Source: Stylophora pistillata (lineage: Eukaryota). Taken from it: a DNA stretch of 64,000 nt. The translations under genes were made by a program, and so were the position numbers. Shown piece by piece: positions 25,610 to 64,000 of this stretch (position 1 is its first letter; the number at the start of each line of letters is the position of its first letter). The stretch is from positions 1,141,936-1,205,935 of the forward strand of contig NW_019217797.1 in the NCBI RefSeq assembly GCF_002571385.2. The letters run 5' to 3'. The notes below the pieces were generated by a model that worked only from the letters and a program-made list of their open reading frames with translations, had not been told where the DNA came from and did no database searches.

Positions 25610-26166
25610 TCCTTAGATTGTCAGCCTTTGAAATGTATAACATGTCTTTTTCGACGTAGGTGTTTCAACGGAACTGTTAAGTTATGGAATTCTTTGCCTT
25701 TGTCATTAAGAACTTTATCTAGTGTTATTTCTTTCAAAGGATCATTAATTAAACGTTACAAAAAAGCTCTTATCGAAACGTTCGATCAGGACAACGTTTT
25801 TAATTGGAAGTCCTTGTGTTCTAAATGCTTTGCTACCAGGAATTTAATTAGTTTTCGCCAGTGTTGCTTCTAATTACTTATAAACTATTATACTTAGGCA
25901 TGTTTTATCTTTTTTAGGAATTTGCATATTTTAGATAGATATTTTGAAGACAATAAATTTAGTTTTGTATTACCAATTTCTTTTCTATCTTTTTTTTTTC
26001 TCCTTTGGACTTTCACCTAGTTGGAGCTTGCTCTGGTGTGATTGTTCCTCACTGAGCTTTTAGCTTTTCGCTTTTCGTTTTACTATTGAGCTTACTTATC
26101 CTTCTTTTTTTTTTTTTATTTTTTTTTTAACTCAGTGGAAGTTTAATAAATAATAAATAAATAAAA
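25610..26166 (+). mobile_element. 3' end of a CR1/L2-type LINE
   Basis: FRRRCFNGTVKLWNSLPLSLRTLSSVISFK motif, then a 3' UTR ending in (AATA)n. Confidence 0.7.
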
Positions 26167-26440
26167 CATATGAAACAGGGTTTTTTTAAAATTTAGTTCA
26201 CGCTAATCATCTATTACAGTAACTTGGTTTCTTTGTAGATCATTCATCAAGACCTTTCAGCCAGGAATGTCTTGGTGGGTGAAAAAGAAACATGTAAAGT
26301 TAGAAACTTCGGCATGGCCAGAGATGTACAGCAGGACGACATTTATGAAAAAACAACAAAGGTATTGCGTTGGTCAATACTTAGCTGTGTAGTCGCGCGA
26401 TGCGTTTCCATTAGAGACCCACAAATTGACTACCATAGAA

Positions 26441-26528
26441 TCTCCAATAGCTCAGGGGTTAGAGCATCCGACCAGGTCACGGAGGGTCGTGGGTTCGAAT
26501 CCAATCTAGGACTCGAATTTTTTTCCGA
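26441..26528 (+). mobile_element. tRNA-derived SINE head
   Basis: A box TAGCTCAGGGG and B box GGTTCGAATCC; same family as 40839-41102. Confidence 0.7.
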
Positions 26529-31041: not shown

Positions 31042-31145
31042 CTAGTAAAAATGTAATTCAACTGTTTCTTTAACGGCATCTCCTCCACTCGTCGTTCTTT
31101 CAAGGGTGTACGTGGCGCGTTTAGCATTTGCAAGGACGTTCGGAT
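31042..31145 (-). CDS. Candidate terminal cytoplasmic exon of gene B
   Basis: Strong acceptor ttatttccctttgcAG, phase 1, reads PNVLANAKRATYTLERTTSGGDAVKETVELHFY*. An alternative earlier stop exon lies at 33236-33258. Confidence 0.35.
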
Positions 31146-32065
31146 CTGCAAAGGGAAATAAAACAATTATTCATCATTTAGTCTCTTTCCCTTGCAGGGT
31201 AGGTTGTTTTTCTCTTCTTTAGAGAGCGTTCTGAAATATCTAAATCATAACTTAACCTGAGTTATGATTACAGATTCTGTTCCATACTGGTATTTTTATC
31301 GGCTTTCACCTACAATTATTGACCAGAAAATTTTGCTCTCGCCTTAATTCCACGAGCAAGTCCGCATTCGCTTTTCTAAGTTCGTCGCACGAGTATTTTT
31401 TTCGAGACAATACCCGTCTTATTTTGGGTCTCAACATCTTCAAGTCCATGACTCACCCTACGTATTGTACTAAGAAATTTCACGTAAAGGACGCTAATGG
31501 CTGCCATAATTATAAGCTCAACTATAGCATTGTCGGCAAAAGTCCAAATTTGATATGAAGCACTCGCAACAGCAAACGAGTTGATAATACTTGCCATAAG
31601 TCTCAGATTTTCGTTTTCATACGTACCCATACTGTGCAGGATCCCCTTATTTCCTAAATGAAGAACACAGATGATTTCAAGGAACTCAATGTTTTCTACG
31701 TTTTTGATAAAATACTTGTTTAGATTTTATGAATAAAAGTATTTTGACCGGTGGTTGAGATAACAAGTGACGAACTCCTCTCTGCTGGTTAATTCAACCT
31801 TAAGTAGTTCCATTACAAAGAAAACAGACGTTGAATAGGGAAATAAAAAGATCAACTCAAAATTTGCTTCACTCTTGGCTTGGTGAATAACAGCACCTAT
31901 ATGGAAGGATATGATATCGGACCTCATCGGAACTTTATCTTTCAAATGTAAATCTGCAAAGATCAATTTGTCCGATTGTTGTTGGCATTTCCTAGAATCT
32001 AAGACTTAAGGCGCATAGTACAAGGTCATTTTGAAAATAGAAACAAATCAGTTATTTGTAGTAGT

Positions 32066-32322
32066 AAAGCCTGCTTACGAGCCAAGTGGCCCATTGGGCC
32101 GGCGCTTAACTTCCGGGTTTCCGTGGCAAGAAGCGACTAGGAGCATTTCTACTCCCCCCTGCATGGAATGCTAGTCCATCACAGCATTAAATTGGCCGGT
32201 GCCCTTTTAATACTCCTGGGTGAAGAGAAGCACTGTGAGAGTAAACTGTGTTGCCTAAGAACACAACACAATGTCCCCGGCCAGGGCTCGAGTGCAGTAA
32301 CTGTCAGGCCACCGCGCCTCCA
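32066..32322 (-). mobile_element. tRNA-derived SINE (cnidarian SINE2-like)
   Basis: GAGGCGCGGTGGCCT...CGAGCCCTGGCCGGGGACATTGTGTTGTGTTCTT...GGACTAGCAT body, typical of core-domain SINEs. Confidence 0.7.
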
Positions 32323-33727
32323 TGTTTTCATTCCACTACAACGTTAATATTTACCTTTTCAAAAGTATGCATTCAACTGATAATGTAGTATTCAACTACA
32401 GTATCAAGTTTTCCTTCAAGGGCGAAAGTGAGTAATATTTTATTCAAAGGAGTGAAACAGGATCCGAAATACGCCGAGCAGTTGCCGATTGGAAATAAAC
32501 TAATTAAATTTATATTGCCGATACTTACGACTGATCTGTAGACTTTTCTCATTTCCACTCAATGGTTTTTGTTCCATTTCTGGTTATGAATAAAATAATT
32601 AAAATATATTAGTTTTATTACTTATTTCCTTGCATTCCTCATCAAAGTTAGCCCAGAGCTAATTCACTTTGGAAAAATACTCGCATTGTTTTAATCATAA
32701 AAGTCCTATAGATTGTTAACTAAAGATACAAACAAAAGAACATTTCGGAAGAGCATAAGTCTAAAATCTGGTAAATGATTAACTCTTCGTTCGTTTGTAA
32801 ATTTTTTCGTTTGTTGTATTTTTTTGTTTTTTGTTTTCGTTAGTTGAAAGTGAAATTTCGGACCAAGCGAGCCGGTAGGGACAGTACTGAACATAACAAA
32901 GGCTTATAAACATGCCGAGTCCCGTAACTGACATTGAATGTGGGTAGAGAAGTAAATCTTCCAAGAGAAATCGAAATGGACAATCCGAGTTTTAAAGAAT
33001 TCACGGTCGATTGAATTGTAATCTAACATACGGTGATAAAAATTACACACAGTTAACAATCGGATAGTATATATATATATATTGTCGTTTTCAAAAACAA
33101 AGCAAACAAAAAAAAAATTATGAAGGATATAACCAAACTGGCATAACTGTCAAATTTCATACAAATCACGATGGTGTAAGACAGAGTGCGATCATGTCTA
33201 GGTCTATCTCGGCTAGCTAGCTCATCTTGGTGATCTCAGGTCATCTCAAAGAAGCGACCTTAGAAATAAAATCATACGCCCTTCGAGTGAACAACTTAAA
33301 AGCTTTCTCCTTCCGATCCGTTGAGCGGAAGGCCACATGCATCAGTCACTGCAGCCAAGTTTTAAGACGAGCCATCTTCATGTTTCTGTGAATTCGGCTG
33401 TCGTTCATTCATAAAGTATAAGCCTTGAGCAGTTTGTTTTCTAACAGTCGTGTGGAAAAACTTGCGTGTTTTTATGAGCCACATTTTGACCAGGTTTTAC
33501 TGAACAATTCATTGAAAATTAAGACTAAAATACTTCAGGCAAGTGTTGAATTCGACTTGCTGAACCACGTCTCCCTACACTTCTTTCGTGTTGTAGCCGC
33601 TTCCTAAGTGCTTTACCACAGAAAAGAGGACAGCCAAGGCTTCTCTGTTTGTTAAATCAAAGGGGATGGAAGAAGGTCAGAAGATGTTGTAGACGTAACT
33701 AATTAAATCCATATCTTCAATACATAC

Positions 33728-33784
33728 TGCAGATCTGTACACCTTCTTCAGTTCCAGTTAATGGTTTAGTTTCAGCTTCATCTT
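33728..33784 (-). CDS. Gene B cytoplasmic micro-exon
   Basis: AG/GT flanked, phase 1-1, EDEAETKPLTGTEEGVQIC. Confidence 0.5.
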
Positions 33785-34462
33785 CTAGACATGCATAGAG
33801 GAATTCGATAGATTAGACTTATTAACTTTAGGCCGGCGACAATTTACCTACAAAACATATCTCGCTTTATTCCATTTGATAAAGTCATGGTCAACGTCAT
33901 GGTTTTGTTTGTGATAAGCAGGATGCAAATTCTTTATTAATTGAGGGTAGCACACCATAGTATGACAAAGTCTGATAAACTATTGACCCTTTTACAAACA
34001 AATAAACATGCTAAAATCAAATCAAGCATTACAAAGGACTAAAAATATGTTACAAACTATGAAATAATTGTAGATAAACAGAAATAGACTCAGTACAAAT
34101 TAAAGATAGTTTTAACGAGGTCAATTTTCTCTCGTTACTTAATACCAGTACTTATTTCTCAAAAATCATTTGAAAAAAAAAAGTATTTTGACTGACGAAA
34201 CTGTTCTTCCTGCTAAAATTGTAAATATGTGGAGATCAATCTGCTGCTTATTGATGATATAGCTTGTAATACTTGATGCACGTTAATCCTTTCAAAAAAA
34301 TTTACTTCTTTATCTTTTTCTTCTCTAGATCTCACTTTCTTGGCATTTAAATGCCTAATTTTCTTTGGAGGTGGAAGTAGAGATAGATTTTATGTAAAGG
34401 GTGAAGCATGGTTAGAATATGTTGTCGACCTGACTAGTTAACTATAAATCTTCGACACATAC

Positions 34463-34507
34463 CATTCAGCTGATCTCTTTCTCCATTTCCACGTGATGAT
34501 GGTTTAT
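34463..34507 (-). CDS. Gene B cytoplasmic micro-exon
   Basis: AG/GTATGT flanked, 45 nt, phase 1-1, DKPSSRGNGERDQLN. Confidence 0.55.
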
Positions 34508-34944
34508 CTTTCAAAGCGGTCCGAAGCAGGATAATTTGATGAAAAAAAGATTAGTACTTCTTTCTTAGTATTTTTCGNNNNNNNNNNNNNNNNNNNNNNN
34601 NNNNNNNNNNNNNNNNNNNNNNNNNNNNNNNNNNNNNNNNNNNNNNNNNNNNNNNNNNNNNNNNNNNNNNNNNNNNNNNNNNNNNNNNNNNNNNNNNNNN
34701 NNNNNNNNNNNNNNNNNNNNNNNNNNNNNNNNNNNNNNNNNNNNNNNNNNNNNNNNNNNNNNNNNNNNNNNNNNNNNNNNNNNNNNNNNNNNNNNNNNNN
34801 NNNNNNNNNNNNNNNNNNNNNNNNNNNNNNNNNNNNNNNNNNNNNNNNNNNNNNNNNNNNNNNNNNNNNNNNNNNNNNNNNNNNNNNNNNNNNNNNNNNN
34901 NNNNNNNNNNNNNNNNNNNNNNNNNNNNNNNNNNNNNNNNNNNN

Positions 34945-34978
<34 letters not shown>

Positions 34979-35081
34979 CTCTATTTAACGTGGGTAGGAA
35001 CACTTAGCTGAAGCTAGTTTACATGTTTTCCACAAACAGTTTACAGGTTTTCCACTTGTATCTGTTAGTTGGCATACTTAC

Positions 35082-35180
35082 CTTTTTTCCATCGTCTCCA
35101 ACAAACCCAGAAAGCAAAGGCAATGAACAAAAGAAACAACAAAGATCCCGACAAAGAACCGACTAATATCCATGTGGACC
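35082..35180 (-). CDS. Gene B transmembrane exon
   Basis: GSTWILVGSLSGSLLFLLFIAFAFWVCWRRWKK, AG/GTAAGT, phase 1-1. Confidence 0.85.
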
Positions 35181-36059
35181 CTGACGAAATAAACATTTGC
35201 TGATCAGTCGCAAATTTTAAAGCAAAGTGTATGACATCGTATTAATTCTGTTTCTTTTTTCCTGAGGCAGAAGTAAATATTTGCTGTATATGATGTTGTA
35301 TTAAAATATTTTTTCCCTGCGGCAGAAGGAAACATTTACTGTATATGACGTATGAATTTTACTTTTTTCTTAGCAGAAATATACATTTTCTTACCAGTCG
35401 TAAATTTCAAAGCAAAAATTATGACATCATATTAATTTTGTTGTTTTCTGAGGCAGAAAACTCTATGAACGTACATATGCTGGTGGTACCAGTCTAATAT
35501 GAGATATTCAATGCAGTTTTAACGATGAACTCAAACATTTTAAGGTTGGGGTCTACTGGAAATTTTATTCCCGACTAATGTATTCGAAGTACATTTAATT
35601 TCCTTTGCAGCAGCACTGGCCTTTCGCTTAGACTTTGTCTAAATTTAGGAACAGCGCCTTTTTATGATCAATGGTTCTAATGTTGTAGATTTTAGCCATC
35701 TTACATTACAGATTCTTTGCACAAGACGGGAGGGGTGAACTTATTTCAAAACAAAACTCTCGTTAACTGATATGCCATCTCGGGTCACGGGCTGGCCACG
35801 ACTTCTTATCATTGCAAATTCTCTACTGAATTTAGAGTGAAATTTGCCTAGAAAAACTGGCGCTTTCTCGTTACATTTGATTGCAACTAAAAATTAAAGG
35901 GGAACGGTTTATTTTGATTGTCTATTCCGCAAGGATTTAGCTTAATTGCCTTGACTGATCGGGCCCAGACCCGGCCATATGCGGTAAGTGATTAGGTATG
36001 TTGCCGTTCAAACCACACGCACGTCTTCGTAGAGTCTTCAAAGAATAGTAGTCAGATAC

Positions 36060-36250
36060 CTGAGGAGGATACCCTCGGCGAACTTGTTGCTGAAATAATG
36101 GCATCTTGAGGTGCCATGATCGACAGTGGATCTATTGTGAATTTTCCGAGTTTTCTGTCCAGCGCGGCGTGTTTCAGGGCAGAAAAAATGTTGTCGTTGC
36201 GTACTGTTCGTTCGAATCTTAAATTGAAAATTACAACCACGCTGCCTCTT
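36060..36250 (-). CDS. Gene B SEA-domain exon 3 (GSVVV) plus Ser-rich stalk
   Basis: RGSVVVIFNLRFERTVRNDNIFSALKHAALDRKLGKFTIDPLSI..., phase 2-1. Confidence 0.85.
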
Positions 36251-36363
36251 CTGTTAAAACAAAGAAAACAAGACATAAATTGAAAAGAAAATACTTCCAC
36301 ACTAAAAGTTATATCATAGGGTTCTACTTTTGCAAACTTTGAAAAAAAAACTGAGTCACTCAC

Positions 36364-36422
36364 TCAAAACGTAGGATTTCAACGCTTTTGAAGTTCTTAT
36401 CAGTTCTGAAAAAATCTCCAAT
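36364..36422 (-). CDS. Gene B SEA-domain exon 2
   Basis: 59 nt, IGDFFRTDKNFKSVEILRFE, phase 0-2; same size in genes A and C. Confidence 0.85.
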
Positions 36423-36520
36423 CTGGGAAAAAAAAACTATTTTTCAATACGGATTTGTGATCTTTAAAAGGTATGTATGATATGCCATTCTTTCGCATAG
36501 CGATAAACATGAAAACTTAC

Positions 36521-36639
36521 CACTTCAATAACGCGCTTTGAGAGGTGCTGGTATCTTCTGCTCTCTTCGTACATGAGACTTGTGTCAAATTCCTCATTAG
36601 TGATTGTCATCTTTACATTTATCACATTACTGGCTCTTT
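36521..36639 (-). CDS. Gene B SEA-domain exon 1
   Basis: 119 nt, ERASNVINVKMTITNEEFDTSLMYEESRRYQHLSKRVIEV, phase 1-0. Confidence 0.85.
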
Positions 36640-37167
36640 CTAATATGAAAAAAAAAATAGCTGTTACTGCTCTAGGCAAATGCAAATAGTAGAAAGAGAA
36701 AACAAAACAACAAAACCGGAAAAAATAAAGCAGAAATTAAGGGGAATGCAATGTTGTTATGGTAACCTTATAAGTAATAGTCGCAACATGTATATTTATA
36801 TAATATATATATATATATATAATTGAACATATCCCAGAATCACCCTGAAAGAAACAAACTAAAATGTGTGGAAGTTAGGATCCATCGAGGATATGGAATT
36901 TATGGAGTATATAGTTATCATAACCACAATTTCTGTCTGCGGCGCGTGATTACTTAGAAATAAAATTGTCCATATTTGCCCTTAAGCTATCAAATTTCTT
37001 TCGGCTAAGTGGTAAATAAAAATAACTGAAGTACGAAGCAACAAAAGTATTTTTCGATGCTGTCGGTTGGTTTCCTTACATTTATTTTAGCGACCCTCAG
37101 TTAAAGTAATCAGACTAACTATACACTGCTGCAATAATTAATTTCCTCAGATAGCAGTCCTACTAAC

Positions 37168-37413
37168 CCGCAACATCAAGATATGTACGAGCAGTGGCTG
37201 GAGAACCAATTCCATTTTGTGCTGTACATTTATACCATCCGTGGTCGTTGAATCTTGCGGAATCAAAATGAAGTTCACTACCACTCCCGACATTGTTTTT
37301 GTGAGTCCAAGATATGGTCGGTACCGGATTTCCCATCACTCGACAATAGAGGGTTACATTTTTACCCAACTGAACTGTCTGGTTGATAGATATATCCATT
37401 ATCTGGGCAGGAT
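37168..37413 (-). CDS. Gene B Ig domain 3 exon (I-set-like)
   Basis: VTLYCRVMGNPVPTISW...DHGWYKCTAQNGIG, phase 1-1. Confidence 0.9.
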
Positions 37414-37562
37414 CTGTTAAGAAGTAAAAGTTATAGACTTTCCTTTTCTATAGATGCGATAAGTGTTTTTAAGGAACTCAGTTGGTGATGCGGAATAGGC
37501 TGGACATCTTCAGTTTCTTTTACACTGAACTAATTTTACTTACAAATGAATAAAGGCTGATA

Positions 37563-38120
37563 GTTTCGAAAGAAACTGTTTGGGGCTGCGTCGGTGGGAG
37601 TAACGAAATAATTTGGATATATCAACAAAGTTGAAATGGTAAATTGGCCACCGTAATGATTACAAAAGCTGACGTTTCGAGCGTTAGCCCTTCGTCGGAG
37701 CGAATAGAGGAATTGTGGGTTGTGTGTGCTTTTAAAGGCAGAAAATGGAGCTACGTTATTGGTGGGTGCATGGCAACGAGAAAAACATGAATAAATTAGT
37801 GGAATGAAAAGCGTTCATTGATCCCTGTGGGATTTAGACTGCCGGTTTGAAAGATGAGCTTTTGTTCAAGATTTTTACGGCTTTCCGTGCCACCTAAGTG
37901 CAAGGAAAGACCGCAGATTGCCATATGTTGCTTAGAATGATTAGGTAAATTAAAATGTCTAGCGACTGGTTTCGATGTGTCCTTGTCATTCCTTTCCACG
38001 TCTCGAAGGTGTTCTCGGAATCGGTCACCTAGTCTTCTGCCTGTTTCGCCGATGTATATCTATTTGCAATNTTACGGTGGCCAATTTACCATTTTAACTT
38101 TGTTGATATATCCAAATTAT
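37563..38120 (-). mobile_element. 5'-truncated Penelope-like element (GIY-YIG end plus pLTR) with an inverted terminal duplication
   Basis: YIGETGRRLGDRFREHLRDVE...PVARHFN...GINE (37796-38060), a hammerhead motif, and a 49-bp inverted repeat at 37608-37656 / 38072-38120. Confidence 0.9.
37668..37701 (-). ncRNA. Minimal type I hammerhead ribozyme motif (core variant CCGACGA)
   Basis: GCT-CCGACGA-AGGGC TAAC GCTC-GAAAC-GTC-AGC. Stem I is GCT/AGC and stem III is the palindromic ACGT. Confidence 0.7.
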
Positions 38121-38132
38121 AATTTTACTTAC

Positions 38133-38387
38133 AGTTTACATCAACTTCGCAGAATTCTCTGCTGTTGTTTCCAATTCCGTTCCAAGCAAGGCACTCGTAT
38201 CTACCAGAGTCGCTGCGTTTGATGTCTTCTATAAACAGTATTTCACGGTTTGAAAGTGTCTCTCTTGTATTCGCTCTGTTCCATACAACACTCGGCAACG
38301 GATTACCGGTGAAATTACATACAAGTTTGACATTGTCACCTTCCGTGAGGGCACTGGGACATTGCACTGATGTTATACTTGGTGGGA
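38133..38387 (-). CDS. Gene B Ig domain 2 exon
   Basis: PPSITSVQCPSALTEGDNVKLVCNFTGNPLPSVVW...DSGRYECLAWNGIG, 255 nt, phase 1-1. Confidence 0.9.
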
Positions 38388-54700: not shown

Positions 54701-55198
54701 ACAGCAACTAATAGCGATGAAGTATGAAATACAGTAACTAATACATGTTCTTAAAGTGCCCCTGAGACGAAAACTGACCATTTTATTTTGGCCTAAATTG
54801 TTCACACGATGTTGAATTGGGTCAAGTTAAGACCCTTTTTGTCATTAAAAACTCAAAACAAACCTTCGATGAACAATTTTTACCGCTTCAAAGTCGTCCA
54901 AAAATCGTCCGCCATTGCTGAAAACATGTTCCAGCCGAGCTCGCAAAACGTCATCATNATATTAATTTAATATTGTATTATTATTAGTTATTCTTATTTA
55001 ATATGAGAAGTATCTTTTAGATTTAGACACGAAGGAGCAGTATTGTACTCATCATTAGTATGTATATATCTTTTATGTTTATATCTATCTATGTATATAT
55101 AGGAAGTCTGCATTTTTATTTTTCTGTGTTACAATGCTCGATACATAAAAGTAGAGCGCAACATATATTGAGTTAGAAAAATAGAAAGATTGCGCTTT

Positions 55199-55243
55199 AA
55201 TCCCCACAAGCCTGTTTCGTGATTGCTCACTCATCAGGGGATT
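55199..55243 (-). ncRNA. Minimal type I hammerhead ribozyme motif (GUG at the cleavage triplet)
   Basis: AATCCC-CTGATGA-GTGA GCAA TCAC-GAAAC AGGCTT GT-G-GGGATT: 6-bp stem I, GNRA-capped stem II, near-palindromic stem III. Confidence 0.75.
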
Positions 55244-55692
55244 TTATGAAAGGGGTATAAAACTATGGTCGTCAGCGCATTTAAATATGAACCGAAGATG
55301 AACATTATAGAATCATATCAAATGTTAAAACAAATGCAAGGAAAGATTTTTCAGGAGTACATATATAAGAACAGTTTTGGTTTTTTGTCTTCCCAAACAT
55401 CATGCAGCGAACGTAAATTATTACCTCTCTTATAGAATAAGTATGCGATAAAACACGGCAAACACTTTCCAAAAATGTTTGAAAAACTGTTATGACTCCT
55501 TTGAACATTTAGCAAAAATCTAATCATTTAAAGAAAATGTAGTGCAGCTACAAGGCTTGACTTCAGTGAAGCAACTCGAAAACTTCTCCCTGCCTAGAAA
55601 CCTTCCAGCTTGCTTCGATGAGTCTCCTCACACATGTTCTTTTTTTTTTTTTTCACGATTATGGTTTTTTCCTTTTTTTTTGTAAACTAAAG

Positions 55693-56040
55693 GAGCCTTA
55701 CCAGCCTGGAAAGTTCAACCTGTGAACTTCACTTCTGTCGTTCAGGGAGAGCACTTAACCCTCACGTGGGAATATAAAATGGATGGAACATTTGAACAGG
55801 TTCAATTTTCTCATTTGACGGATGCTGGGAAAGAGAAGTCGGTTGCTGTTAAGTCTTCAATGCTTGGAAACGTAGTCGTTGCCTCTGAATACCAGGAAAG
55901 ATTCAAAGTGAGAATATCAGACTCACAAACAACAGTAAAAATTCTCAGAGCAAAGAAAGCTGACCTTGGAAAGTACAAGCTCGAGGTTATAAACAAGAAA
56001 TTGAAAAAAATAGACAGCGTGGTGGAGGTTTCTGTTTATT
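55693..56040 (+). CDS. Gene C atypical (cysteine-less) V-like Ig exon
   Basis: ALPAWKVQPVNFTSVVQGEHLTLTWEY...YQERF...DLGKYKLEV, 348 nt, phase 1-1. Confidence 0.88.
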
Positions 56041-56782
56041 GTAAGTACTAATGATGCACAAACACGCACGGGAAAGACTAATAGAAAGGCGCAATCGGCT
56101 GGATTTTACTGAACATTTCACGTTCAGATTCCGTATTAGGACCAAGAAACTTCAGACAAAAGTGTGAAAATCGGCCTGCCGAGCTATTTCGGTTTGTGAC
56201 GTATTGCTATTTCGGTTTGTGACGTATGGTGAACTTTGATGGCTTGAGAACTTTGATGGTTTGACATTTTGAAACCTTCAGCTTCATTCAACCAATCATA
56301 TTGCTTGAACCATTCTAAAGAGAATTCTGATTGGCTTATTGTAGTCTACTCTACGAGAACAAAGAGCATCTGTGCTGACGACACTGTTGTTTGTTTTGAA
56401 AATTGAAAGTTATTCTTGGGGAATTTAACGGATTCTTTATCATAAAAGAGATAAAGAAGCCTTGGCTGTGCTCTGTTCTGTTGAAAAGCACTTAGGATTC
56501 GATAAGACTACGTCGCGTGTTTCTCCCTACACTTCTTTCGTGCTCTAGCTGCTTCCTGTGTGCTTTACAACAGAACAGAACACAGTCAAGGTTCTCTGTT
56601 TGTTAAATAGAAGATAAAGAAAACGAAAAATAGATTATGTCTAGTCAAACTCAATCGGAATAGACTGCTGGTCGGCCGGGATATTAAAGTAGTACATACG
56701 CAATTCTTATCACTGAATCCTAGTTTTGAAATTTTGAAAAGAAAGAGAGGCCAAAACATCTACTATTTGTTGTCATTCTTAG

Positions 56783-57040
56783 ATCCACCAGCCAACACCG
56801 TTCTCTCAGTATTTCCCAACAGCAGCGAAGTACTAGGGGGGAGTGTCTTATATGAGGAATGCTACACAGATGCCAATCCTGGTCCACATATTTTTCTGTT
56901 ATACTTCAATGGAAATCTTATTAGAAACAGTAGCTCAGGGGAGTTTAACGTAACCGTTGACAGCGATGGAGTATACACCTGTGCCCCTATTAATACAGTT
57001 GGTTCGGGAGACAATGCGTCGTTCAGCGTGACTATTGTTG
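56783..57040 (+). CDS. Gene C Ig domain 2 exon
   Basis: PPANTVLSVFP...ECYTDANP...DGVYTCAPINTVG, phase 1-1. Confidence 0.88.
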
Positions 57041-57486
57041 GTACGGAATCCGTCAGGTTTTTAGACAGGCTTTCTTGACGTATTCATAAACTACATTATA
57101 GACATAGGCATTATCGCTAAGCCTCTAGCAAGAATTTTGAGTGATTTGTTCATTAAAAGGGAACAGTCATGTATTTATTCAAGGTTTAATCAATATTGAC
57201 CTACGTGATACAACAAATATAACCTAAAGGTGGGGGTGATGTAAAAATATGACAGAAATTCAATGTGTCTCTAGCATTCGTACCATCTTCAGTTTTGAAG
57301 AATCCTGTGTTCTGTTACGTAACAAGCAGTATTTTGTTGCCTTTTTTTTCAAACCGTAGGCGAAAGCCATTTGACACGTGTTTCAGTTTAGCCTCTAGAA
57401 CACTATGCAATAAATCAAAAAAATAATTTTAAAGAATGCTAATATTTCCAGCCTCCTAGTAACTCTTAGTTTTGAACATCTATCAG

Positions 57487-57729
57487 GCAAGCCTATAATA
57501 GCTTCGGAGCCCAAAAGCGTTACACCATTGGTAGGTGAGGCTACATCTCTGAGGTGCCTTGCCTATGGCAGTCCTCCGCTAGCTATTACGTGGGCTCGTC
57601 ATGGCGTTGGAAATGGCTCAGAGCTCTTTTTTCCATCAGCGAGGTTCTCTGACCGTGGATGGTACGGATGCGTAGCTAAAAATGGTCATGGAGTCTCTTT
57701 TAGTTCACTTGCATACCTCGATGTAACCG
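57487..57729 (+). CDS. Gene C Ig domain 3 exon
   Basis: SLRCLAYGSPPLAITW...GSELFFPSARFSDRGWYGCVAKNG; clear paralog of 37168-37413. Confidence 0.9.
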
Positions 57730-57824
57730 GTAAGAACATAAATATATGTATGATTTGGCCCTTCTTGTAACAAAGCCGTTTTGAATTGTTTAAAGCAATT
57801 TTATGGACCCTATTTACTCTTTAG

Positions 57825-57943
57825 ATAGTGCCAGTACCTTCATTACTGGACGAGTGACAATAACAAATGAGAATTTCGATAATAGCTTGGAAAATCCAGC
57901 AAGTATGAGATATCAAACCATTAAAAGGCATTTTGTTGAGGCG
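57825..57943 (+). CDS. Gene C SEA exon 1
   Basis: 119 nt, DSASTFITGRVTITNENFDNSLENPASMRYQTIKRHFVEA. Confidence 0.85.
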
Positions 57944-58778
57944 GTAAGTGTATGTACGGTTAGTCTTAATGTTACGCGATAGGCTAGGGTCTCGGTGCCA
58001 ATTGAGTCGTCTCATAATGGTATCACGACAATGATTATTAGTTTGAACACAATCTTAATTGAATACCATCCTAATGTTCTGTTCAGACTACTAAAAGGTT
58101 TTGTTCCGACTACTAAAATAACTTGTTCAGACTACTATAATAACTTCAAGCGAAAACCACATGCATTTTTATATACCATAATAGTAACACAACGAAATGT
58201 CCTCAGTAGGGTGGTCCCGTCATAAGTCCAGTCTCACTGGGGGGCGTGAGATCCTCCCACTGTGGGTCCGGGCCCGAACACCTAAAGGCTAATTTTTGTC
58301 TACGCCTTTTTGAGGTATTACTTTGAACTGAGAGGGTAAGCTTGATGAGATGGGGTCTTATTTCAAAACAATACTAGATAAAGGGGAGCGACATGATTAC
58401 TAATAACATTAAATCCTTGCAAGAGCCATCACTTAGCAGAAGTTACTTATTTAGCAGGAAGCCTCTGGAAAAAAAAAAAAGATGGATAGCGTAAGACTAA
58501 ATGGGAGATCAGAAGTCTATAGATGGCTTCCATAAAAGGAAATTACAACTATGTCAGAGGTCGAATCGTAGCCTGAGTTAGTGGAAACAGAACTTCTCAC
58601 GCTAACGGTGTTTCATTTTCAATGAAAAATTCTGCCGTACACGATGAGAAGTCGCATATCCAAAATTTTGTAAGATACTGCTGTTGAACTTACGTAATGT
58701 TGCTTTTTAATATTCAATAGCAGTATATGATTTTTTTTTCACGAAAATTTCCAATCACAGTTCATATTTAAAATTCAG

Positions 58779-58837
58779 GTAGGGGAAGTTTTCAAGAACG
58801 ACGTCACCTTCCACAGCACGGATGTCACAAGATTTGA
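58779..58837 (+). CDS. Gene C SEA exon 2
   Basis: 59 nt, VGEVFKNDVTFHSTDVTRFE, phase 0-2. Confidence 0.85.
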
Positions 58838-58904
58838 GTGAGTGGCAATTGCACCATTTTAGTATTTTAAAACCAACTACTTATTGTCACCTTACGCGGT
58901 GGCA

Positions 58905-59200
58905 TTCATATATTCATCCATCCATAAATTCCTTTATTAATCTACCCATCCCTTCTCCGTTCATCCATTCACTCAATCATCCAATCATAAATTTTTCCCC
59001 CCGTCCTCCTTCCATGCTTTCATTTATCGATCCAGCCACACATACACACAGCTATTCTTCCATCCTTCCCTCCTTCTATCCTTCCTTACATCCATTCATC
59101 CCCCCTAAAGTTCCCTCTCTCTCTCTACCAATCTATGCATCTTTCATTCATATATATATTCATCAATCCATACATATTTCCATTTGTTTCCATATCAATC
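58905..59200 (+). repeat. Degenerate (TCCA)n low-complexity tract
   Basis: Visible CATC/TTCC-rich repeats. Confidence 0.6.
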
Positions 59201-59275
59201 CAGTCTTGTTATTAGTCAAACTCTATTTTGATCATTTACTAAATCAATTCCGTTGAATGTTGCTTTCACTGGCAG

Positions 59276-59496
59276 AAATGACAGGAAAGGAACTGTGAAC
59301 ATCCTTTTTGTACTAGCGTTCAAAGAAGCTGTTCTAACAGAAAGAAAAATCACTCTTTTAAAAATCGCTGCCAGAGAAGGAAAACTTGGGGTCTTAGATG
59401 TTGATCCAGCCTCCGTAATGGTTATTCGTGAGACTGAGGAACCTGTGCTTGAATGTAATTTTGGATGCAGACCGTCACGCTCACCGGAAAGTTTAG
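59276..59496 (+). CDS. Gene C SEA exon 3 plus stalk
   Basis: NDRKGTVNILFVLAFKEAV...GKLGVLDVDPASV...CNFGCRP, phase 2-1. A possible second in-frame acceptor lies just downstream (gacAG). Confidence 0.82.
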
Positions 59497-59574
59497 GTAC
59501 TTTTTTCTATTAATTGTAAAGTATTGTGGGACGAGGAAAATACCTTTAATCTCAGGGAAAGGTTTTATTAAAAG

Positions 59575-60468
59575 TGGAGTAGAGAAAGATTGAGAGAAGG
59601 AAAATAGGAAAGAAATACTGGGGACACTTTCAATACGATAAAGGAAAAGAAGGCAAAACCTTGTTGAAGTGGTCTTGAAAAGCTTACAAGGGTAAAATTA
59701 CTTTAAAAAATGGCTCTGCGATAAAGCTACTTTTATCACAATTTAATCTCTGTTTCACACAAGAAATAATCCATTGGCAAATAGATAGTTCTTTAAAATG
59801 GGGATATAGAAAGATTAAGAGAAGGAAAATAGGAAAGAAATACAGGGGACACTTTCAATACGATAAAGAAAAAGAAGGCAAAACCTTGTTGAAGTGGTCT
59901 TTAAAAGCTTACAAGGGTAAAATTACTTTAAAAAATGGCTCTGCGATAAAGCTACTTTTATCACAATTTAATCTCTGTTTCACACAAGAAATACTCCATT
60001 GGAAAATAAATAGTTCTTTAAAATGGGGATAGAGAAAGATTAAGAGAAGGAAAATAGGAAAGAGATACAGGGGAAACTTTCAATACGATAAAGAAAAAGA
60101 AGGCAAAACCTTGTTGAGCTGGTCTTTAAAAGCTTACAAGGGTAAAACTATTTTAAGAAAATGGCTCTGCGATAAAGCTATTTTTATCGCAATGTAATCT
60201 CTGTTTCACACAAGAAATAATCCATTGGCAAATAGATAGTTCTTTAAAATGGAAATAGAGAAAGATTAAGAGAAGGAAAATAGGAAAGAAATACAGGGGA
60301 AACTTTCGATACGATAAAGGAAAAGTAGGCAAAACCTTGTTGAAGTGGTCTTTAAAAGCTTACAAGGATAAAATCATTTAAAAAAAAAACGCTCTGCGAT
60401 AAAGCTACTTTATGCAATCTCTGTTCCACGCAAGAAATAATCCATTGGCAAATATATAGTTCTTTAAA
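59575..60468 (+). repeat. Intronic tandem repeat, ~225-bp unit x4
   Basis: AGAGAAAGAT... recurs at ~59581, 59806, 60031 and 60257. Confidence 0.92.
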
Positions 60469-60645
60469 CTGTGTAGTAAACTAACGTATAATGACCTCGC
60501 TACCTGGGATAGCTAATACGACTAATTCAACGGTTTTAGCGTATTGTGTGGGAAAGATTTCTATCAGAGACCTGTGTTCTCACGTGATTAAAAAACGAGC
60601 CTTTTAGTAAGGTTAAAATCGGTGATTTCTTGATTTGCTCTGCAG

Positions 60646-60747
60646 CTTGCTCATGTGACAACAAAATATTCAGAGCAGTGACAGGAATTCTTGTTTTAAT
60701 AATCATCGGTCTTCTTATTTATGTATTCTTCCAGCACAGAAGATCAG
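60646..60747 (+). CDS. Gene C transmembrane exon
   Basis: ACSCDNKIFRAVTGILVLIIIGLLIYVFFQHRRS, phase 1-1. Confidence 0.85.
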
Positions 60748-61457
60748 GTAACGGTTACATAAATTCTAGATGAACAGATTACAAACTAAACTGGGAATAG
60801 TCCGCGACAGTGAAGTTAAAAATAGTGTGAAGTCCTATCGTTTTTGTAAAAGAAGTCATGTAAATGGCGACGCCTAGATTACATACTACTTGTCTTCTTT
60901 GGGCGACGAGGTCGAATGCAAAGAGTCATTCCGTTACAAGCATCTTGAAATGCTCTTATTACTTGGTTTTAAGTGATGTGAGTCATGTCTAATTGTTTTA
61001 TTCTGGGAAATGCTTTCCACCCCTGCAAGGCTGACTGGTTTAACAGATGCAAAAGCGTCCATTGGGATACTAAATGTGATCCCTTGAGGTCTCCGACTTG
61101 GAACTGAATATCAGACAGGCGTTTTTGTTGAAGGCGTCAACGAAGTTTTGTCCAGTCTCCAAACAGTGGTACAAAACCATGGTCACCTGTTCATCATCTG
61201 AATGTTTGTTGAAAACTAATCAATCACCTAGGGACTTCATGTTTTCCATGAGGCGACTCATAACTATCCAAAGTCATCGACTGATGAAGGATAACAGTAT
61301 GAAGCCAAAATAAAACAGGCAATTCACGTCACCTTGGTCTTCACAGAGTAGAATAGACGATTGCATTTTATTGTTTTACAAATCTGAAGAATCTTTAAGA
61401 AAATTTTAAAATATATTTAGTATTTGTTGTAACGGACTTTTTCTATCTTCATCTTAG

Positions 61458-61476
61458 GAATTGAATCCAAGGAGAG
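61458..61476 (+). CDS. Gene C juxtamembrane micro-exon candidate a
   Basis: ttAG...AG|GTTAG, 19 nt, phase 1-2, GIESKER. Confidence 0.5.
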
Positions 61477-61603
61477 GTTAGCGAAAAATCTCCCTGCACT
61501 CGTTATGTTTCTTAACTGTAGAGGAGTTTTATCGTTATTTTTTTTAAAGTATTATTTTTTTAATTCTTTATTTATTTTTCCACGATTCGTTCACCCTTTT
61601 CAG

Positions 61604-61634
61604 AATGTAAAAGTTTAAGAATAAACCGTTTCAG
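61604..61634 (+). CDS. Gene C juxtamembrane micro-exon candidate b
   Basis: ttttcAG...AG|GTAAC, 31 nt, phase 1-2, ECKSLRINRFR. Confidence 0.45.
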
Positions 61635-61776
61635 GTAACTTTAGAGCCTTGCACATTATTTTTCTCTTTATACAATGCAAAATGATATTTCTAGTAACTT
61701 TATCCAAAACGCTCGTTTTATTCGACAAAAATCGACGAATCAGAAAGGTGTACCTTTGTCTCTACTTTCTTTCAAG

Positions 61777-61822
61777 GAGTTTTGAAATGGCGAGAGAAGA
61801 AACTCGGCGTAGACCTCCAGGC
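61777..61822 (+). CDS. Gene C juxtamembrane exon
   Basis: SFEMAREETRRRPPG, phase 2-0, donor GTAAGT. Confidence 0.65.
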
Positions 61823-62115
61823 GTAAGTTGAATATCAGTGTCACAAACAACTTCAAAGCAAATTTAAAGAATCTCTGTCTTTCATATTTTCCGCTCACAA
61901 GTCACCCTAGGTAGGCTAGCAGTTTTAATATTATCTATCAGACAAAAGTTGAAAAGAGTGCGATTGACAGAAAATTTTAGATTCTAATAAGAAGCCTTAA
62001 AGTTTCTAATTTATGAAAAACTTTGATAACATCCAGTTGGTCAGCGTGGATTCCAGGTACCTGACATCGTGTAATCGACCTCTTTAATAATCTTGTGCTT
62101 TCTCGTCTTTTGAAG

Positions 62116-62413
62116 CATGAAATTTCCATTACTGGAGTCAAAAAAGGTGGAATGCTGGCTAACCCCAAAGTCGCAGACGAATCTGTTGCTGAAACGCCGG
62201 AAACAGAGGCCGATACTGAGCCAATAAATACTGGAATTATTGGATACGACCTGGCCCTGCCGGTCTCCAAATCGTCTTGGAAAGTTCCACGAGAAAATGT
62301 AACTGTAAGAGAAACAATAGGCAAGGGAGCCTTTTCGCAGGTGGCCAGGGGAACAGTCACAAGTCTCCATGGGGCTTCTGAAGTAACAGTAGTTGCAGTA
62401 AAAATGCTTAAAG
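62116..62413 (+). CDS. Gene C tyrosine kinase N-lobe exon
   Basis: WKVPRENVTVRETIGKGAFSQVARG...VAVKMLK. Confidence 0.92.
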
Positions 62414-63206
62414 GTAGAAACTATTCATTTTCAATCCATACACATTTCTATCAATGGGTTAAGCACATAAGCACATTCACCGCCTTTACAAACCACCTTC
62501 AAATACTGTACATTTCTTTCGGGACTGTCATAAGAACCTTCTAAATAAACTTCAAGTCGAAGGCTTGCAAGATTTGTTTCCCATCGAGCCATGATACCTT
62601 TTTCAATTCTCATTATGATTCGAAGATTAATTTCCGTCAGAGCCAGGAGAATTTCTTCGACTCCAACCGCAAAAACATACCTTAAGCGCAGATGATTAAA
62701 GCATAGTAACAAATAAGCGAGTGTTTAAAGAATATGATATAACTTCTAGCAGCAATTAAATGTCCGAAAAATAAATTTTGCGCCTCATCTACTTAAAAGG
62801 GAACCAGCCTATTTAATAGTAAGTTCAGTGCGATTGATTCAAATTTCTTAGAGAAAGTAGGTGATTAGCATGCAACCGTTTGATATACACTTGACTGCGA
62901 AAACACTGACACCTAAAAAGCGTTTAAAATTTACTATGAAACCTTACGGCTTTATGGGCCACAATAATAACCATCATTAGTTGTGCGTCGTTAATAATAG
63001 CAACTATCCAATGTTTCCTAGAAAAATAAGGATTATCATACCAAAGGGATTTCACATAAAAAGCAAGAAAAGAGAATCACTAATTATGTATCTCTGCCAA
63101 CATTTCCCGTAAAGCCGTTGGGTCACATCACATTTGAGGTGTCGACGTTTTTGCATCCTAATATACTTTTTATCCAACTTACTTTTTTTCCACTTTTAAA
63201 TAATAG

Positions 63207-63311
63207 AAAACGCTCCTGCCTCAGATAGGAAGGATCTGCTCTCAGAGCTTGACCTAATGCAGCAACTCAAACCTCATCCATATGTCATCAAACTACTGGG
63301 ATTTGTTGCAG
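63207..63311 (+). CDS. Gene C kinase exon (helix C)
   Basis: ENAPASDRKDLLSELDLMQQLKPHPYVIKLLGFVA. Confidence 0.88.
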
Positions 63312-63399
63312 GTAGCGTAATTAAAACCCCACTGTGCACGACAAACGAGAAGTTCCTAAAGGGTTAGATCTTTTGTAACGTATTTTTTTGTATTGACAG

Positions 63400-63590
63400 A
63401 TCCGTTATTGGTGTTGACTGAGTATGTTCCATTCGGAGACCTACTCGGTTATTTACGAAAAAGTCGAGGACTGAACGACACTTACTACAGCAACCCGAAG
63501 ATCCCAGCAGAAACCACTTTGACGGCAGACAAACTGATGAAGTTTGCTTGGCAGATTGCCGATGGGATGAACTACTTGTCCTCTAAATGT
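63400..63590 (+). CDS. Gene C kinase exon (hinge and insert)
   Basis: DPLLVLTEYVPFGDLLGYLRKSRG...FAWQIADGMNYLSSKC. Confidence 0.92.
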
Positions 63591-63953
63591 GTAAGCTTGT
63601 GAACTGCGTGACTTCTACTCATCCTTATGTCTAGTTTCTAGAACAGCGCTAACACGATTCTCCCTCCTCCCAAGATCCAATTTTCCTAAGAATTGATCCC
63701 CTTTTTTCAGTTATTTAATTGACGGCAGGTGATGATCGCAGTTTACCTGAATCATTTGTAAATGTTAGATTTGATCTCAAAATTAATCTCCTTCTTTGTC
63801 TAGTATATCAAACGGCTGTTTCAAGCAGGTTGATAAATTGGCTGTTTTATGATTTATCACGAGGATATACAGGAGATATGTAACCACTGTGATTATGCAT
63901 CCTATATAAGTTCAAGCATACAGTTTTTTTTATATATATATCTTTCGGAGCAG

Positions 63954-64000
63954 ATAATTCATCGAGACCTGGCAGCACGCAACGTGTTGGTTGGAGAAAA
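63954..64000 (+). CDS. Gene C kinase catalytic-loop exon (truncated by the window end)
   Basis: IIHRDLAARNVLVGE, the tyrosine kinase signature. Confidence 0.92.
   Translation, partial: MIHRDLAARNVLVGE

What the first reader, a model, noticed from the sequence alone, without database searches (positions are those of the whole stretch)
31042..64000. Head-to-head paired receptors: a kinase-less Ig-Ig-Ig-SEA-TM gene and its tyrosine-kinase paralog share a ~720-bp divergent promoter
Seen: genes B (-) and C (+) have the same exon plan. Both have a 64-nt leader exon, three phase-1 Ig exons, SEA split into 119-nt, 59-nt and third exons, and a TM exon. Their Ig3 sequences are clearly paralogous (GSELHFDSARFNDHGWYKC vs GSELFFPSARFSDRGWYGC). 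C continues into a kinase with VAVK and HRDLAARN, while B has only short tail exons and I see no kinase motif on the minus strand before gene A. Known: paired signalling/decoy receptors in gene clusters are typical of immune and allorecognition systems, and FGFRL1 is a kinase-less relative of FGFR. Ig plus SEA is not the ectodomain of canonical FGFR or RET. Inference: this is a co-regulated signalling receptor and decoy or co-receptor module, possibly for self/non-self or microbe recognition.
Basis: partly seen in the sequence, partly recalled or inferred. Interest (0 to 1): 0.85.

Follow-up and report, generated by a model that had tools for sequence, protein, structure and literature searches.

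The report
Coral receptor kinase with kinase-less neighbour
In the coral Stylophora pistillata, a cell-surface receptor tyrosine kinase and an old relative that lacks the kinase sit head-to-head about 0.7 kb apart; both genes are real, conserved and already annotated but unstudied, and no test here showed that they work as a pair.

Summary
Gene B (minus strand, 50949 to 31042) and gene C (plus strand, 51667 to beyond the window) share an exon plan: a 64-nt leader, three phase-1 Ig exons, SEA exons of 119 nt, 59 nt and a third, and a TM exon. Their start codons are 717 bp apart.

B matches NCBI XP_022803692.1 exactly (555 aa, 13 exons). It has a 94-aa tail and no kinase. The N gap lies in B's intron 8, and Pocillopora orthologues are colinear across that junction.

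C is XP_022803619/28 ("FGFR4-like", 856 aa). Its kinase is intact and closest to RET and FGFR.

B is not a pseudogene. Three Pocillopora species have 559-aa kinase-less orthologues, some on intron-less contigs that must be transcripts. Gene and accession numbering puts them next to the C orthologue.

The head-to-head unit occurs three times in this genome.

The two ectodomains are only 33% identical. B's tail has no ITIM or ITAM. dN/dS is below 1 in every exon. The spacer is no better conserved than the introns.

The "paired immune receptor" reading is therefore not supported. A decoy or co-receptor role like FGFRL1 is plausible but untested.

This scan found the same family earlier on other DNA (s1-781821).

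The parts
31042..50949 (-). Gene B, NCBI LOC111341014: kinase-less V-like Ig, Ig, Ig, SEA, TM and tail protein of 555 aa (CDS span including the stop codon)
   Evidence: P0096 maps exactly as 13 exons. Pfam finds Ig and SEA but no kinase.
50886..50949 (-). B exon 1: 64-nt leader and signal peptide (MGCFLEFATLLFWICIISEKA) with a GC donor (GCAAGT)
   Evidence: The same GC donor is present in B'; the C2297 copy has a GT donor.
48788..49138 (-). B exon 2: Ig1, V-set-like, no cysteines, phase 1-1
38133..38387 (-). B exon 3: Ig2 (I-set/Ig_3)
37168..37413 (-). B exon 4: Ig3 (I-set/Ig_3)
36060..36639 (-). B exons 5-7: SEA domain (119, 59 and 191 nt) with a G367-S368-V-V-V motif at the beta-hairpin
   Evidence: Pfam SEA 46.6 bits. 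AF2 pLDDT is 79-94 in the 10-residue blocks across 311-410. VIA Z is 13.7 and 13.2 to MUC16 SEA; the cleaved MUC1 chain that ends at residue 1097 aligns to model residues 310-367.
35082..35180 (-). B exon 8: TM exon, 99 nt, phase 1-1, so skipping it would keep the frame
   Evidence: P. verrucosa isoform P0104 lacks the homologous exon.
34578..34944 (.). Assembly gap (N), inside B intron 8, with a trinucleotide repeat ((TAA)n on the + strand) on its high-coordinate side
   Evidence: Orthologues are colinear across the exon 8/9 junction.
31045..34507 (-). B exons 9-13: cytoplasmic tail of 94 aa (45, 57, 51, 27 and 101 nt). Exons 10 and 11 encode a repeated motif. There is one conserved Tyr (YTxER). 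AATAAA lies 17 nt after the stop.
   Evidence: The last exon is unique in the genome.
50950..51666 (.). 717-bp spacer between the two start codons; candidate bidirectional promoter
   Evidence: It is homologous to the B'-C' and C2297 spacers.
51030..51205 (.). About 175 bp of high-copy interspersed repeat inserted in the spacer; absent from the B'-C' spacer
   Evidence: 1233 first-look candidates genome-wide.
51667..51730 (+). C exon 1: leader and signal peptide. A second, conserved ATG is at 51679.
55693..57729 (+). C exons 2-4: Ig1 (V-like), Ig2 and Ig3; all phase 1-1
57825..59496 (+). C exons 5-7: SEA (119, 59 and 221 nt). The hairpin motif is KGTVNI rather than GSVVV.
60646..60747 (+). C exon 8: Cys-rich linker end plus TM
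61458..64000 (+). C exons 9-14: juxtamembrane region and the kinase N-lobe to catalytic loop (VAVK, HRDLAARN). The gene continues to window-equivalent 67506.
   Evidence: PK_Tyr 293.6 bits. RET is the nearest kinase with a solved structure.

Best explanation
Shown:
- B and C are two intact paralogous type I membrane receptor genes of a pocilloporid-coral family. The layout is signal peptide, a cysteine-less V-like Ig, two I-set Ig domains, SEA and TM.
- They arose by an old inverted duplication that predates the Stylophora-Pocillopora split.
- C keeps a RET/FGFR-type tyrosine kinase. B has instead a 94-aa tail with no kinase and one conserved tyrosine.
- The two genes stay next to each other in Stylophora and in Pocillopora. 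In Stylophora the head-to-head pair was copied as a unit at least twice.

Inferred:
- The 0.5-0.7 kb spacer acts as a bidirectional promoter, so the two proteins are made in the same cells.
- B acts as a non-catalytic modulator of C-type signalling. It could be a ligand sink or a hetero-oligomer partner, in the way FGFRL1 relates to FGFRs.
- B's SEA domain carries the canonical G/SVVV self-cleavage motif. The TM exon can also be skipped in frame. B's Ig ectodomain may therefore be released as a soluble or force-detachable form.
- The conserved tail tyrosine is a possible substrate of the C kinase.
For: - Gene models are exact and the domains are confirmed.
- The ectodomains are colinear: 33% identity over 407 aa, E = 4e-65.
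- There is no kinase on the minus strand.
- B orthologues of 559 aa have the same five tail exon equivalents. Their ectodomains are 65-79% identical to B, which is close to the 71-85% seen for the ectodomain of C.
- Logan contigs of 1.8-3.1 kb encode the whole 559 aa, so they are spliced transcripts.
- B and C orthologues are neighbours in P. damicornis and P. meandrina, and on the same chromosome in P. verrucosa.
- The head-to-head unit is present three times: B/C, B'/C' (494-bp spacer) and contig C2297.
- The SEA fold and the position of the GSVVV motif are confirmed.
- A predicted P. verrucosa isoform lacks the TM exon.
Against: - There are no expression data for S. pistillata, so start sites and co-expression are unknown.
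- The spacer (70-78% identical between the pairs) is no better conserved than the introns (75-82%), so the duplicates give no sign of extra constraint on it.
- It also tolerated a repeat insertion.
- At 33% ectodomain identity, a shared ligand is not assured.
- The other two B-type copies lack the TM and tail, and C' carries a stop codon before its kinase. The pairing is therefore not maintained intact in the duplicates.
- Orientation in Pocillopora could not be checked.
- The B-C complex was not folded.
Confidence: 0.45

Rival explanations
1. B is an independent Ig-superfamily adhesion or recognition protein with its own ligand. The head-to-head position is just the footprint of an inverted tandem duplication, kept because it is neutral, and B has no functional link to C.
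For: The ectodomains are only 33% identical. The spacer is no more conserved than the introns and accepts a repeat insertion. In the duplicated units each partner decays independently: B' lost its TM and tail, and C' has a stop codon. The nearest language-model look-alikes are generic IgSF adhesion molecules, all below 0.9 and so leads only.
Against: B and C remain neighbours across two genera. The pair was duplicated as a unit. Short head-to-head spacers commonly act as shared promoters (general knowledge).
Confidence: 0.35
2. B and C are a classical paired activating/inhibitory immune or allorecognition receptor pair under diversifying selection.
For: The membrane-distal V-like domain changes fastest (dN 0.10-0.15).
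Against: The ectodomains are far from near-identical (33%). B has no ITIM, ITSM or ITAM and no charged TM residue. dN/dS for Ig1 is 0.46 and 0.55, and no exon exceeds 1. B and C each have one-to-one orthologues in Pocillopora with about 75% identical Ig1, which points to ordinary purifying selection.
Confidence: 0.1
3. B is a dying or untranscribed pseudogene copy of an RTK.
For: The other B-type copies are truncated. No S. pistillata transcript contig for B was seen in the protein collection.
Against: All 13 exons are open and carry AG acceptors and GT donors (one GC donor). The tail is conserved in Pocillopora. Pocillopora has full-length transcripts. B's ectodomain diverges at about the same rate as that of the intact kinase gene C.
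Confidence: 0.05
4. B does have a kinase, hidden in the assembly gap or further downstream.
For: A 367-N gap lies 138 bp downstream of the TM exon.
Against: The kinase part of C takes nine or more exons spread over more than 5 kb. B's tail exons continue in frame after the gap to a stop codon followed by AATAAA. The Pocillopora proteins and transcripts end at the same tail. There is no kinase similarity on the minus strand between 27 and 36 kb.
Confidence: 0.02

Closest known systems
FGFRL1 (FGFR5), the kinase-less relative of FGF receptors
   Same: A single-pass receptor whose ectodomain is homologous, at roughly one third identity, to kinase-bearing paralogues, with a short tail of about 100 aa in place of the kinase. 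FGFRL1 is proposed to act as a decoy or modulator (general knowledge). B fits this layout.
   Different: B is not an FGFRL1 orthologue. Its ectodomain is V-like Ig, two Ig domains and SEA, with no acid box. Its ligand is unknown. B sits head-to-head with its kinase paralogue, which to my knowledge FGFRL1 does not.
RET / FGFR / Tie2 receptor tyrosine kinases
   Same: C's kinase domain scores 280 bits against RET and about 245 bits against FGFR1, FGFR2 and Tie2. It has VAVK, HRDLAARN, DFG and PIKW.
   Different: The ectodomain has no cadherin-like domains (RET), no acid box or D1-D3 arrangement (FGFR), and no EGF or FN3 domains (Tie). Instead a SEA domain lies next to the membrane. NCBI's name 'FGFR4-like' reflects only the kinase.
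Vertebrate paired immune receptors (KIR, LILR, SIRP, Ly49)
   Same: Clustered paralogues share one ectodomain plan but differ in their cytoplasmic parts, and the family turns over by birth and death.
   Different: Ectodomain identity is 33%, not near-identical. There is no ITIM, ITAM or charged TM residue, the signalling arm is a fused kinase, and dN/dS is below 1.
Self-cleaving SEA-domain surface proteins (MUC1, MUC16, ADGRF1/GPR110, TMPRSS family)
   Same: The SEA fold matches (Z 13.7, 13.4 and 13.2). B's GSVVV motif lies at the hairpin. The cleaved MUC1 alpha chain ends at residue 1097 and aligns up to B's G367. That MUC1 is cut between G1097 and S1098 is recalled from the literature.
   Different: Here SEA sits between an Ig array and the TM of an RTK family. 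I found no description of an RTK with SEA. C's own motif (GTVNI) departs from the consensus. Cleavage was not tested.
Head-to-head paralogue pairs with a bidirectional promoter (for example COL4A1/COL4A2)
   Same: Two paralogues are transcribed divergently from a spacer under 1 kb, and the unit was duplicated as a pair. In the collagen IV case the products assemble together (general knowledge).
   Different: Promoter activity, co-expression and assembly are all untested here.
Coral Ig-SEA receptor kinase cluster noted earlier in this scan (s1-781821)
   Same: It is in the same genome and has the same V-I-I-SEA ectodomain, joined either to a tyrosine kinase or to a short tail.
   Different: It is a different locus. 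That note describes an inhibitory-looking tail, whereas B's tail has no ITIM. The conserved head-to-head pairing is new here.

Membership tests
Receptor tyrosine kinase (gene C) | Signal peptide, single TM, and a cytoplasmic PK_Tyr domain with VAIK-type Lys, HRDLAARN, DFG and PxxW motifs | tested here: met
   PF07714 293.6 bits. The motifs were read.
FGFR family (NCBI's name for C) | Ectodomain of three I-set Ig domains, an acid box between D1 and D2, and no other domain before the TM | tested here: not met
   D1 is a V-like domain without cysteines. No acidic run is present. A SEA domain lies between Ig3 and the TM. The kinase scores higher against RET than against FGFR.
Kinase-less RTK paralogue (FGFRL1-like layout; gene B) | Ectodomain homologous and colinear to that of a kinase-bearing paralogue | tested here: met
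   33% identity over 407 aa, E = 4e-65. The exon plan is identical.
Kinase-less RTK paralogue (FGFRL1-like layout; gene B) | TM followed by a short tail, no kinase domain, and conservation as such in other species | tested here: met
   The tail is 94 aa. There is no PK_Tyr and no kinase on the minus strand. Pocillopora orthologues of 559 aa have the same tail.
Kinase-less RTK paralogue (FGFRL1-like layout; gene B) | Binds the same ligand as the kinase paralogue, or binds the paralogue itself | not testable with these tools
   Complex prediction returned NOT FOLDED. No ligand is known.
Paired activating/inhibitory immune receptors | Near-identical ectodomains between the partners | tested here: not met
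   33% identity.
Paired activating/inhibitory immune receptors | ITIM or ITSM in one partner, or a charged TM residue for an ITAM adaptor | tested here: not met
   A regex scan of B and three orthologues found none. The TM has no charged residue.
Paired activating/inhibitory immune receptors | Diversifying selection on the ligand-binding domain | tested here: inconclusive
   Paralogue dN/dS for Ig1 is 0.46 (B/B') and 0.55 (C/C'), and no exon exceeds 1. These are whole-exon averages, with no site models and no population data.
SEA domain (autoproteolytic type) | SEA alpha/beta sandwich fold | tested here: met
   Pfam 46.6 bits for B and 39.2 bits for C, against a cut-off of 26.4. Z is 13.7 to MUC16 SEA.
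SEA domain (autoproteolytic type) | G/S[VI]VV motif at the beta2-beta3 turn | tested here: met
   B has G367-SVVV at the hairpin. Pocillopora C has GSVII. S. pistillata C has GTVNI, which is a departure from the consensus.
SEA domain (autoproteolytic type) | Actual self-cleavage | not testable with these tools
   This needs protein expression.
Bidirectional-promoter gene pair | Head-to-head orientation with less than 1 kb between the 5' ends | tested here: met
   717 bp lie between the start codons. The two other copies have about 490-540 bp. Transcription start sites are not known.
Bidirectional-promoter gene pair | Divergent transcription start sites in the spacer, and correlated expression | not testable with these tools
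The supplementary files held for the coral cell atlas do not contain these gene ids.

The most novel reading that the evidence does not exclude
The B/C unit is a conserved, co-transcribed two-part receptor. B's Ig ectodomain is held only non-covalently after SEA self-cleavage, or is secreted when the TM exon is skipped. It is released on contact and either acts on the neighbouring C kinase in cis or trans, or is phosphorylated by C on its single conserved tail tyrosine. This would give pocilloporid corals a contact or force-sensing recognition switch for tissue contact, symbionts or microbes, built from an RTK class (Ig-SEA) that has not been described.
Probability: 0.1. Interest if true: 0.75.

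Novelty: new variant of a known kind. Interest (0 to 1): 0.45.

Why it matters
Corals have very large lineage-specific expansions of receptor tyrosine kinases whose ligands and roles are unknown. At least 148 exons like C's third kinase exon were found in this genome alone.

This locus offers a clean, conserved and testable case of a kinase receptor kept next to a kinase-less relative across genera. The ectodomain layout (Ig-SEA) was absent from the RTK literature I could search.

If the two proteins work together, the pair would be a simple entry point into how corals tune cell-surface signalling, and perhaps into contact or microbe recognition. If they do not, it is an ordinary example of birth-and-death evolution in a gene cluster.

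It also corrects misleading database names: "FGFR4-like", "IgLON5", "hemicentin-like" and "peroxidasin homolog".

Tried and rejected

Pocillopora genomic DNA could therefore not be fetched, and the orientation of the pair there is unknown.

This gives no verdict and is no evidence either way.

Two more head-to-head Ig1 pairs, on C185 and C332, could not be read.

5. The metagenome scan with alignment A1 returned 14 loci (L024-L037). They contain only generic tandem I-set Ig repeats, with no Ig1-type or SEA exon, so they are not this family.

6. phmmer of the SEA third exon against PDB sequences found nothing. The fold search was needed instead.

7. The ESM Atlas returned only generic IgSF adhesion clusters with scores below 0.9. 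The top one is named "Histocompatibility ligand transmembrane form" at 0.86. These are leads only.

8. Paper searches for the gene ids, for accession numbers, and for SEA plus RTK in cnidarians found nothing relevant. Supplementary files of two S. pistillata expression papers do not hold these ids.

9. The word-index protein searches found close relatives only in Stylophora and Pocillopora. This limits what can be said about the family's wider range.

10. Joined step left out. I did not build or submit spliced sequences of my own. Exons were searched by reference, and whole proteins were taken only from database ids returned by the tools.

11. The AF2 model of whole B is poor outside the SEA domain (mean pLDDT 43.6). 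Nothing is claimed about the Ig folds.

Full report
**Source**

The window is Stylophora pistillata contig C14, positions 1141936-1205935. Earlier notes of this scan had already named the species.

**Observation**

Six-frame ORFs and Pfam scans of single exons showed Ig exons and a SEA piece on both strands. Tyrosine-kinase pieces were found only on the plus strand.

A search of protein representatives with B's Ig1 exon, followed by word-index searches, returned the annotated products of both genes:
- B is LOC111341014: XP_022803692.1, 555 aa (P0096). The original genome annotation, PFX33229.1, calls it "IgLON family member 5".
- C is "fibroblast growth factor receptor 4-like": XP_022803619 and XP_022803628, 856 aa (P0118). 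PFX33230.1 calls it "Ret".

I threaded these proteins onto the genome with a strict splice mapper.
- B matches without a mismatch as 13 exons of 64, 351, 255, 246, 119, 59, 191, 99, 45, 57, 51, 27 and 101 nt.
- C has exons of 64, 348, 258, 243, 119, 59, 221 and 102 nt, followed by juxtamembrane and kinase exons.

The start codons are 717 bp apart.

B's first intron has a GC donor (GCAAGT). B' has it too, whereas the copy on contig C2297 has GT.

C's first ATG is not conserved in its paralogues or orthologues, which start at the second Met. C's coding leader may therefore be 52 nt.

**The assembly gap**

The gap at 34578-34944 lies in B's intron 8. It begins 138 bp downstream of the TM exon's donor, counted along the gene, and it ends 70 bp before the acceptor of the next exon. 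Its high-coordinate side is flanked by a trinucleotide repeat ((TAA)n on the + strand).

Both exon borders are phase 1. Stylophora B and the Pocillopora orthologues align across this junction with no extra segment. The gap therefore does not appear to hide any coding sequence. I did not fill it or look it up.

**Is B really kinase-less?**

Yes, on five grounds:
- Pfam finds V-set-like, Ig, Ig and SEA (46.6 bits) in B but no kinase. C has PK_Tyr at 293.6 bits.
- tblastn with C's juxtamembrane and kinase part, run down to E = 50, finds only noise on the minus strand; the best hit has E = 2.9.
- B's tail runs in frame through five small exons to a stop codon at 31044-31042, and AATAAA follows 17 nt later.
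- Orthologues of 559 aa with the same tail exist in P. damicornis (XP_027042370.1), P. verrucosa (XP_066025266.1) and P. meandrina.
- Several Logan contigs of 1.8-3.1 kb encode the complete 559 aa. The gene has 12 introns, so these contigs must be spliced transcripts. This shows that the orthologue is expressed and that its leader and tail are used. This last step is my inference from contig length.

B's ectodomain is 65-79% identical to its Pocillopora orthologue, domain by domain. C's ectodomain is 71-85% identical, and C's kinase 85-91%. B is therefore under constraint and is not decaying.

**What the proteins look like**

B and C ectodomains align end to end at 33% identity over 407 aa, E = 4e-65.

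Neither Ig1 domain contains a cysteine. This agrees with scan note s1-791763.

The AF2 model of B is confident only for the SEA domain, with pLDDT of 79-94 in the 10-residue blocks across residues 311-410.
- That domain matches MUC16, TMPRSS6 and other SEA structures at Z 11-13.7.
- The cleaved MUC1 alpha chain (residues 1041-1097) and the GPR110 chain align to model residues 310-367 and end at B's G367.
- B and its orthologues have G-SVVV at that hairpin. Pocillopora C has GSVII. Stylophora C and C' have GTVNI and GTLNI.
- From the literature as I recall it, G/SVVV is the SEA autoproteolysis site, and Thr can replace Ser in MUC1. B is therefore likely to self-cleave, while C is uncertain.

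B's tail has no ITIM, ITSM or YxxL/I motif, and its TM has no charged residue. It does have one conserved tyrosine (YTxER) and a conserved block, NEKSLQI...NKGIL...DPxVL.

C's kinase is closest to RET (280 bits), then to FGFR1/2, Tie2, FLT3 and PDGFR (about 241-245 bits). No acid box is present. C is therefore not an FGFR by architecture.

**Genomic context**

The pair lies in a larger cluster.
- Gene A (plus strand, window 21.9-28.2 kb) is another Ig-SEA-kinase paralogue. It lies tail-to-tail with B.
- About 43 kb downstream there is a colinear duplicate of the whole unit, B'/C'. Exons are 80-93% identical at the DNA level, and introns and spacer 68-82%. B' has the same 64-nt leader with a GC donor. 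The spacer between the start codons is 494 bp.
- A third head-to-head copy lies on the 9.4-kb contig C2297.
- A DNA search with the spacer finds only these three copies. It also shows that window 51030-51205 is a high-copy interspersed repeat inserted in the B/C spacer.

The duplicates are not intact.
- B' and the C2297 copy have no detectable TM or tail exons. B's last exon is unique in the genome.
- C' has a single in-frame TGA at C14:1245230, just before the kinase, and NCBI ends its models there (528/529 aa). Yet its kinase exons K2-K5 show dN/dS of 0.05-0.17 against C. The stop is therefore recent, allelic or an error.

**Conservation of the arrangement**

- In P. damicornis, the B and C orthologues are both on one 40,215-nt contig as genes pdam_00023708 and pdam_00023707.
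- In P. meandrina they have consecutive accession numbers on one contig.
- In P. verrucosa they are on the same chromosome.

The two genes are therefore neighbours in both genera.

**Tests of the interpretation**

- Paired-receptor criteria fail. Ectodomain identity is low and no inhibitory or adaptor motifs are present.
- Per-exon dN/dS between B/B' and C/C' is 0.15-0.82. Ig1 has the highest dN but a ratio of about 0.5. These are coarse whole-exon averages.
- The spacer is no better conserved than the introns, so the duplicates give no evidence of promoter constraint.
- Co-expression and B-C binding could not be tested.
- No paper on these genes, or on an Ig-SEA RTK, was found in the searchable library.

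**Conclusion**

It is already present in the public annotation under misleading names.

The most likely reading is an old inverted duplication in which one copy lost its kinase and was then kept beside its kinase-bearing partner. A role like that of FGFRL1, as a modulator, decoy or co-receptor, with the added feature of SEA cleavage or shedding, is the best mechanistic guess, but it is inference. Independent function is nearly as likely.

This scan met the same family before at another locus (s1-781821). What is new here is the conserved head-to-head pairing, which was also duplicated as a unit.

**Procedural notes**

- Whole proteins were taken only from ids that the tools returned, and exons were searched by reference. 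The joined step was left out.

Noticed in passing
outside the window: C14:1245230-1245232 (window-equivalent 103295-103297), L015: C', the paralogue of C, has one in-frame TGA just before its kinase, where C has GGA. NCBI models end there (528/529 aa, named 'hemicentin-1-like' and 'contactin-1-like'). The downstream kinase exons still show dN/dS of 0.05-0.17 against C. The stop is therefore recent, allelic or a sequencing error.
   Followed up: partly
outside the window: C14:1229537-1235628 (-), L005; and contig C2297 (L008): Two further B-type copies, B' and the C2297 copy, each lie head-to-head with a C-type leader. Both lack detectable TM and tail exons. Their database models end by reading into the intron after SEA.
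   Followed up: partly
outside the window: window-equivalent 107072-107523 versus 67124-67506: NCBI isoform X2 of gene C (XP_022803628.1) takes its last 45 residues from the terminal exons of C', 40 kb downstream. It is probably a chimeric model caused by paralogue similarity.
   Followed up: yes
window 59568-60468: A 225-bp tandem repeat of 4 copies, 92% matching, lies in C's intron 7. The homologous intron of C' has a single unit.
   Followed up: no
whole genome (G000): At least 148 exons resemble C's third kinase exon, many at 70-81% identity. This is a very large lineage-specific RTK expansion. At least 27 Ig1-type exons of this family are spread over more than 10 contigs, and several have no such kinase exon nearby.
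   Followed up: partly
G000:C185:523327-523653(-) / 528242-528568(+); G000:C332:345420-345752(-) / 350590-350880(+): Two more pairs of family Ig1 exons lie on opposite strands, 4.6-4.8 kb apart, facing head-to-head as in B/C. On C185 only the minus-strand gene has a matching kinase exon (at 501729).
   Followed up: no
window 21900-28200 (+): Gene A is another Ig-SEA-tyrosine kinase paralogue, lying tail-to-tail with B. Its reading frame stops right after the RPTF motif at the end of the kinase domain, at about 28070.
   Followed up: no
outside the window: window-equivalent 71490-72376 (-), L004: An isolated B-like fragment with parts of Ig2 and Ig3 lies between C and B'. It is probably a remnant of another duplication.
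   Followed up: no
protein P0104 (P. verrucosa XP_066025267.1): A predicted isoform of the B orthologue lacks exactly the TM exon, which would give a secreted form. In S. pistillata the TM exon is 99 nt and phase 1-1, so skipping it would also keep the frame.
   Followed up: partly
window 31379-31653 (-): NCBI isoform X1 of B (604 aa, P0099) reads through the donor of exon 12 into the intron. It looks like an intron-retention model.
   Followed up: no
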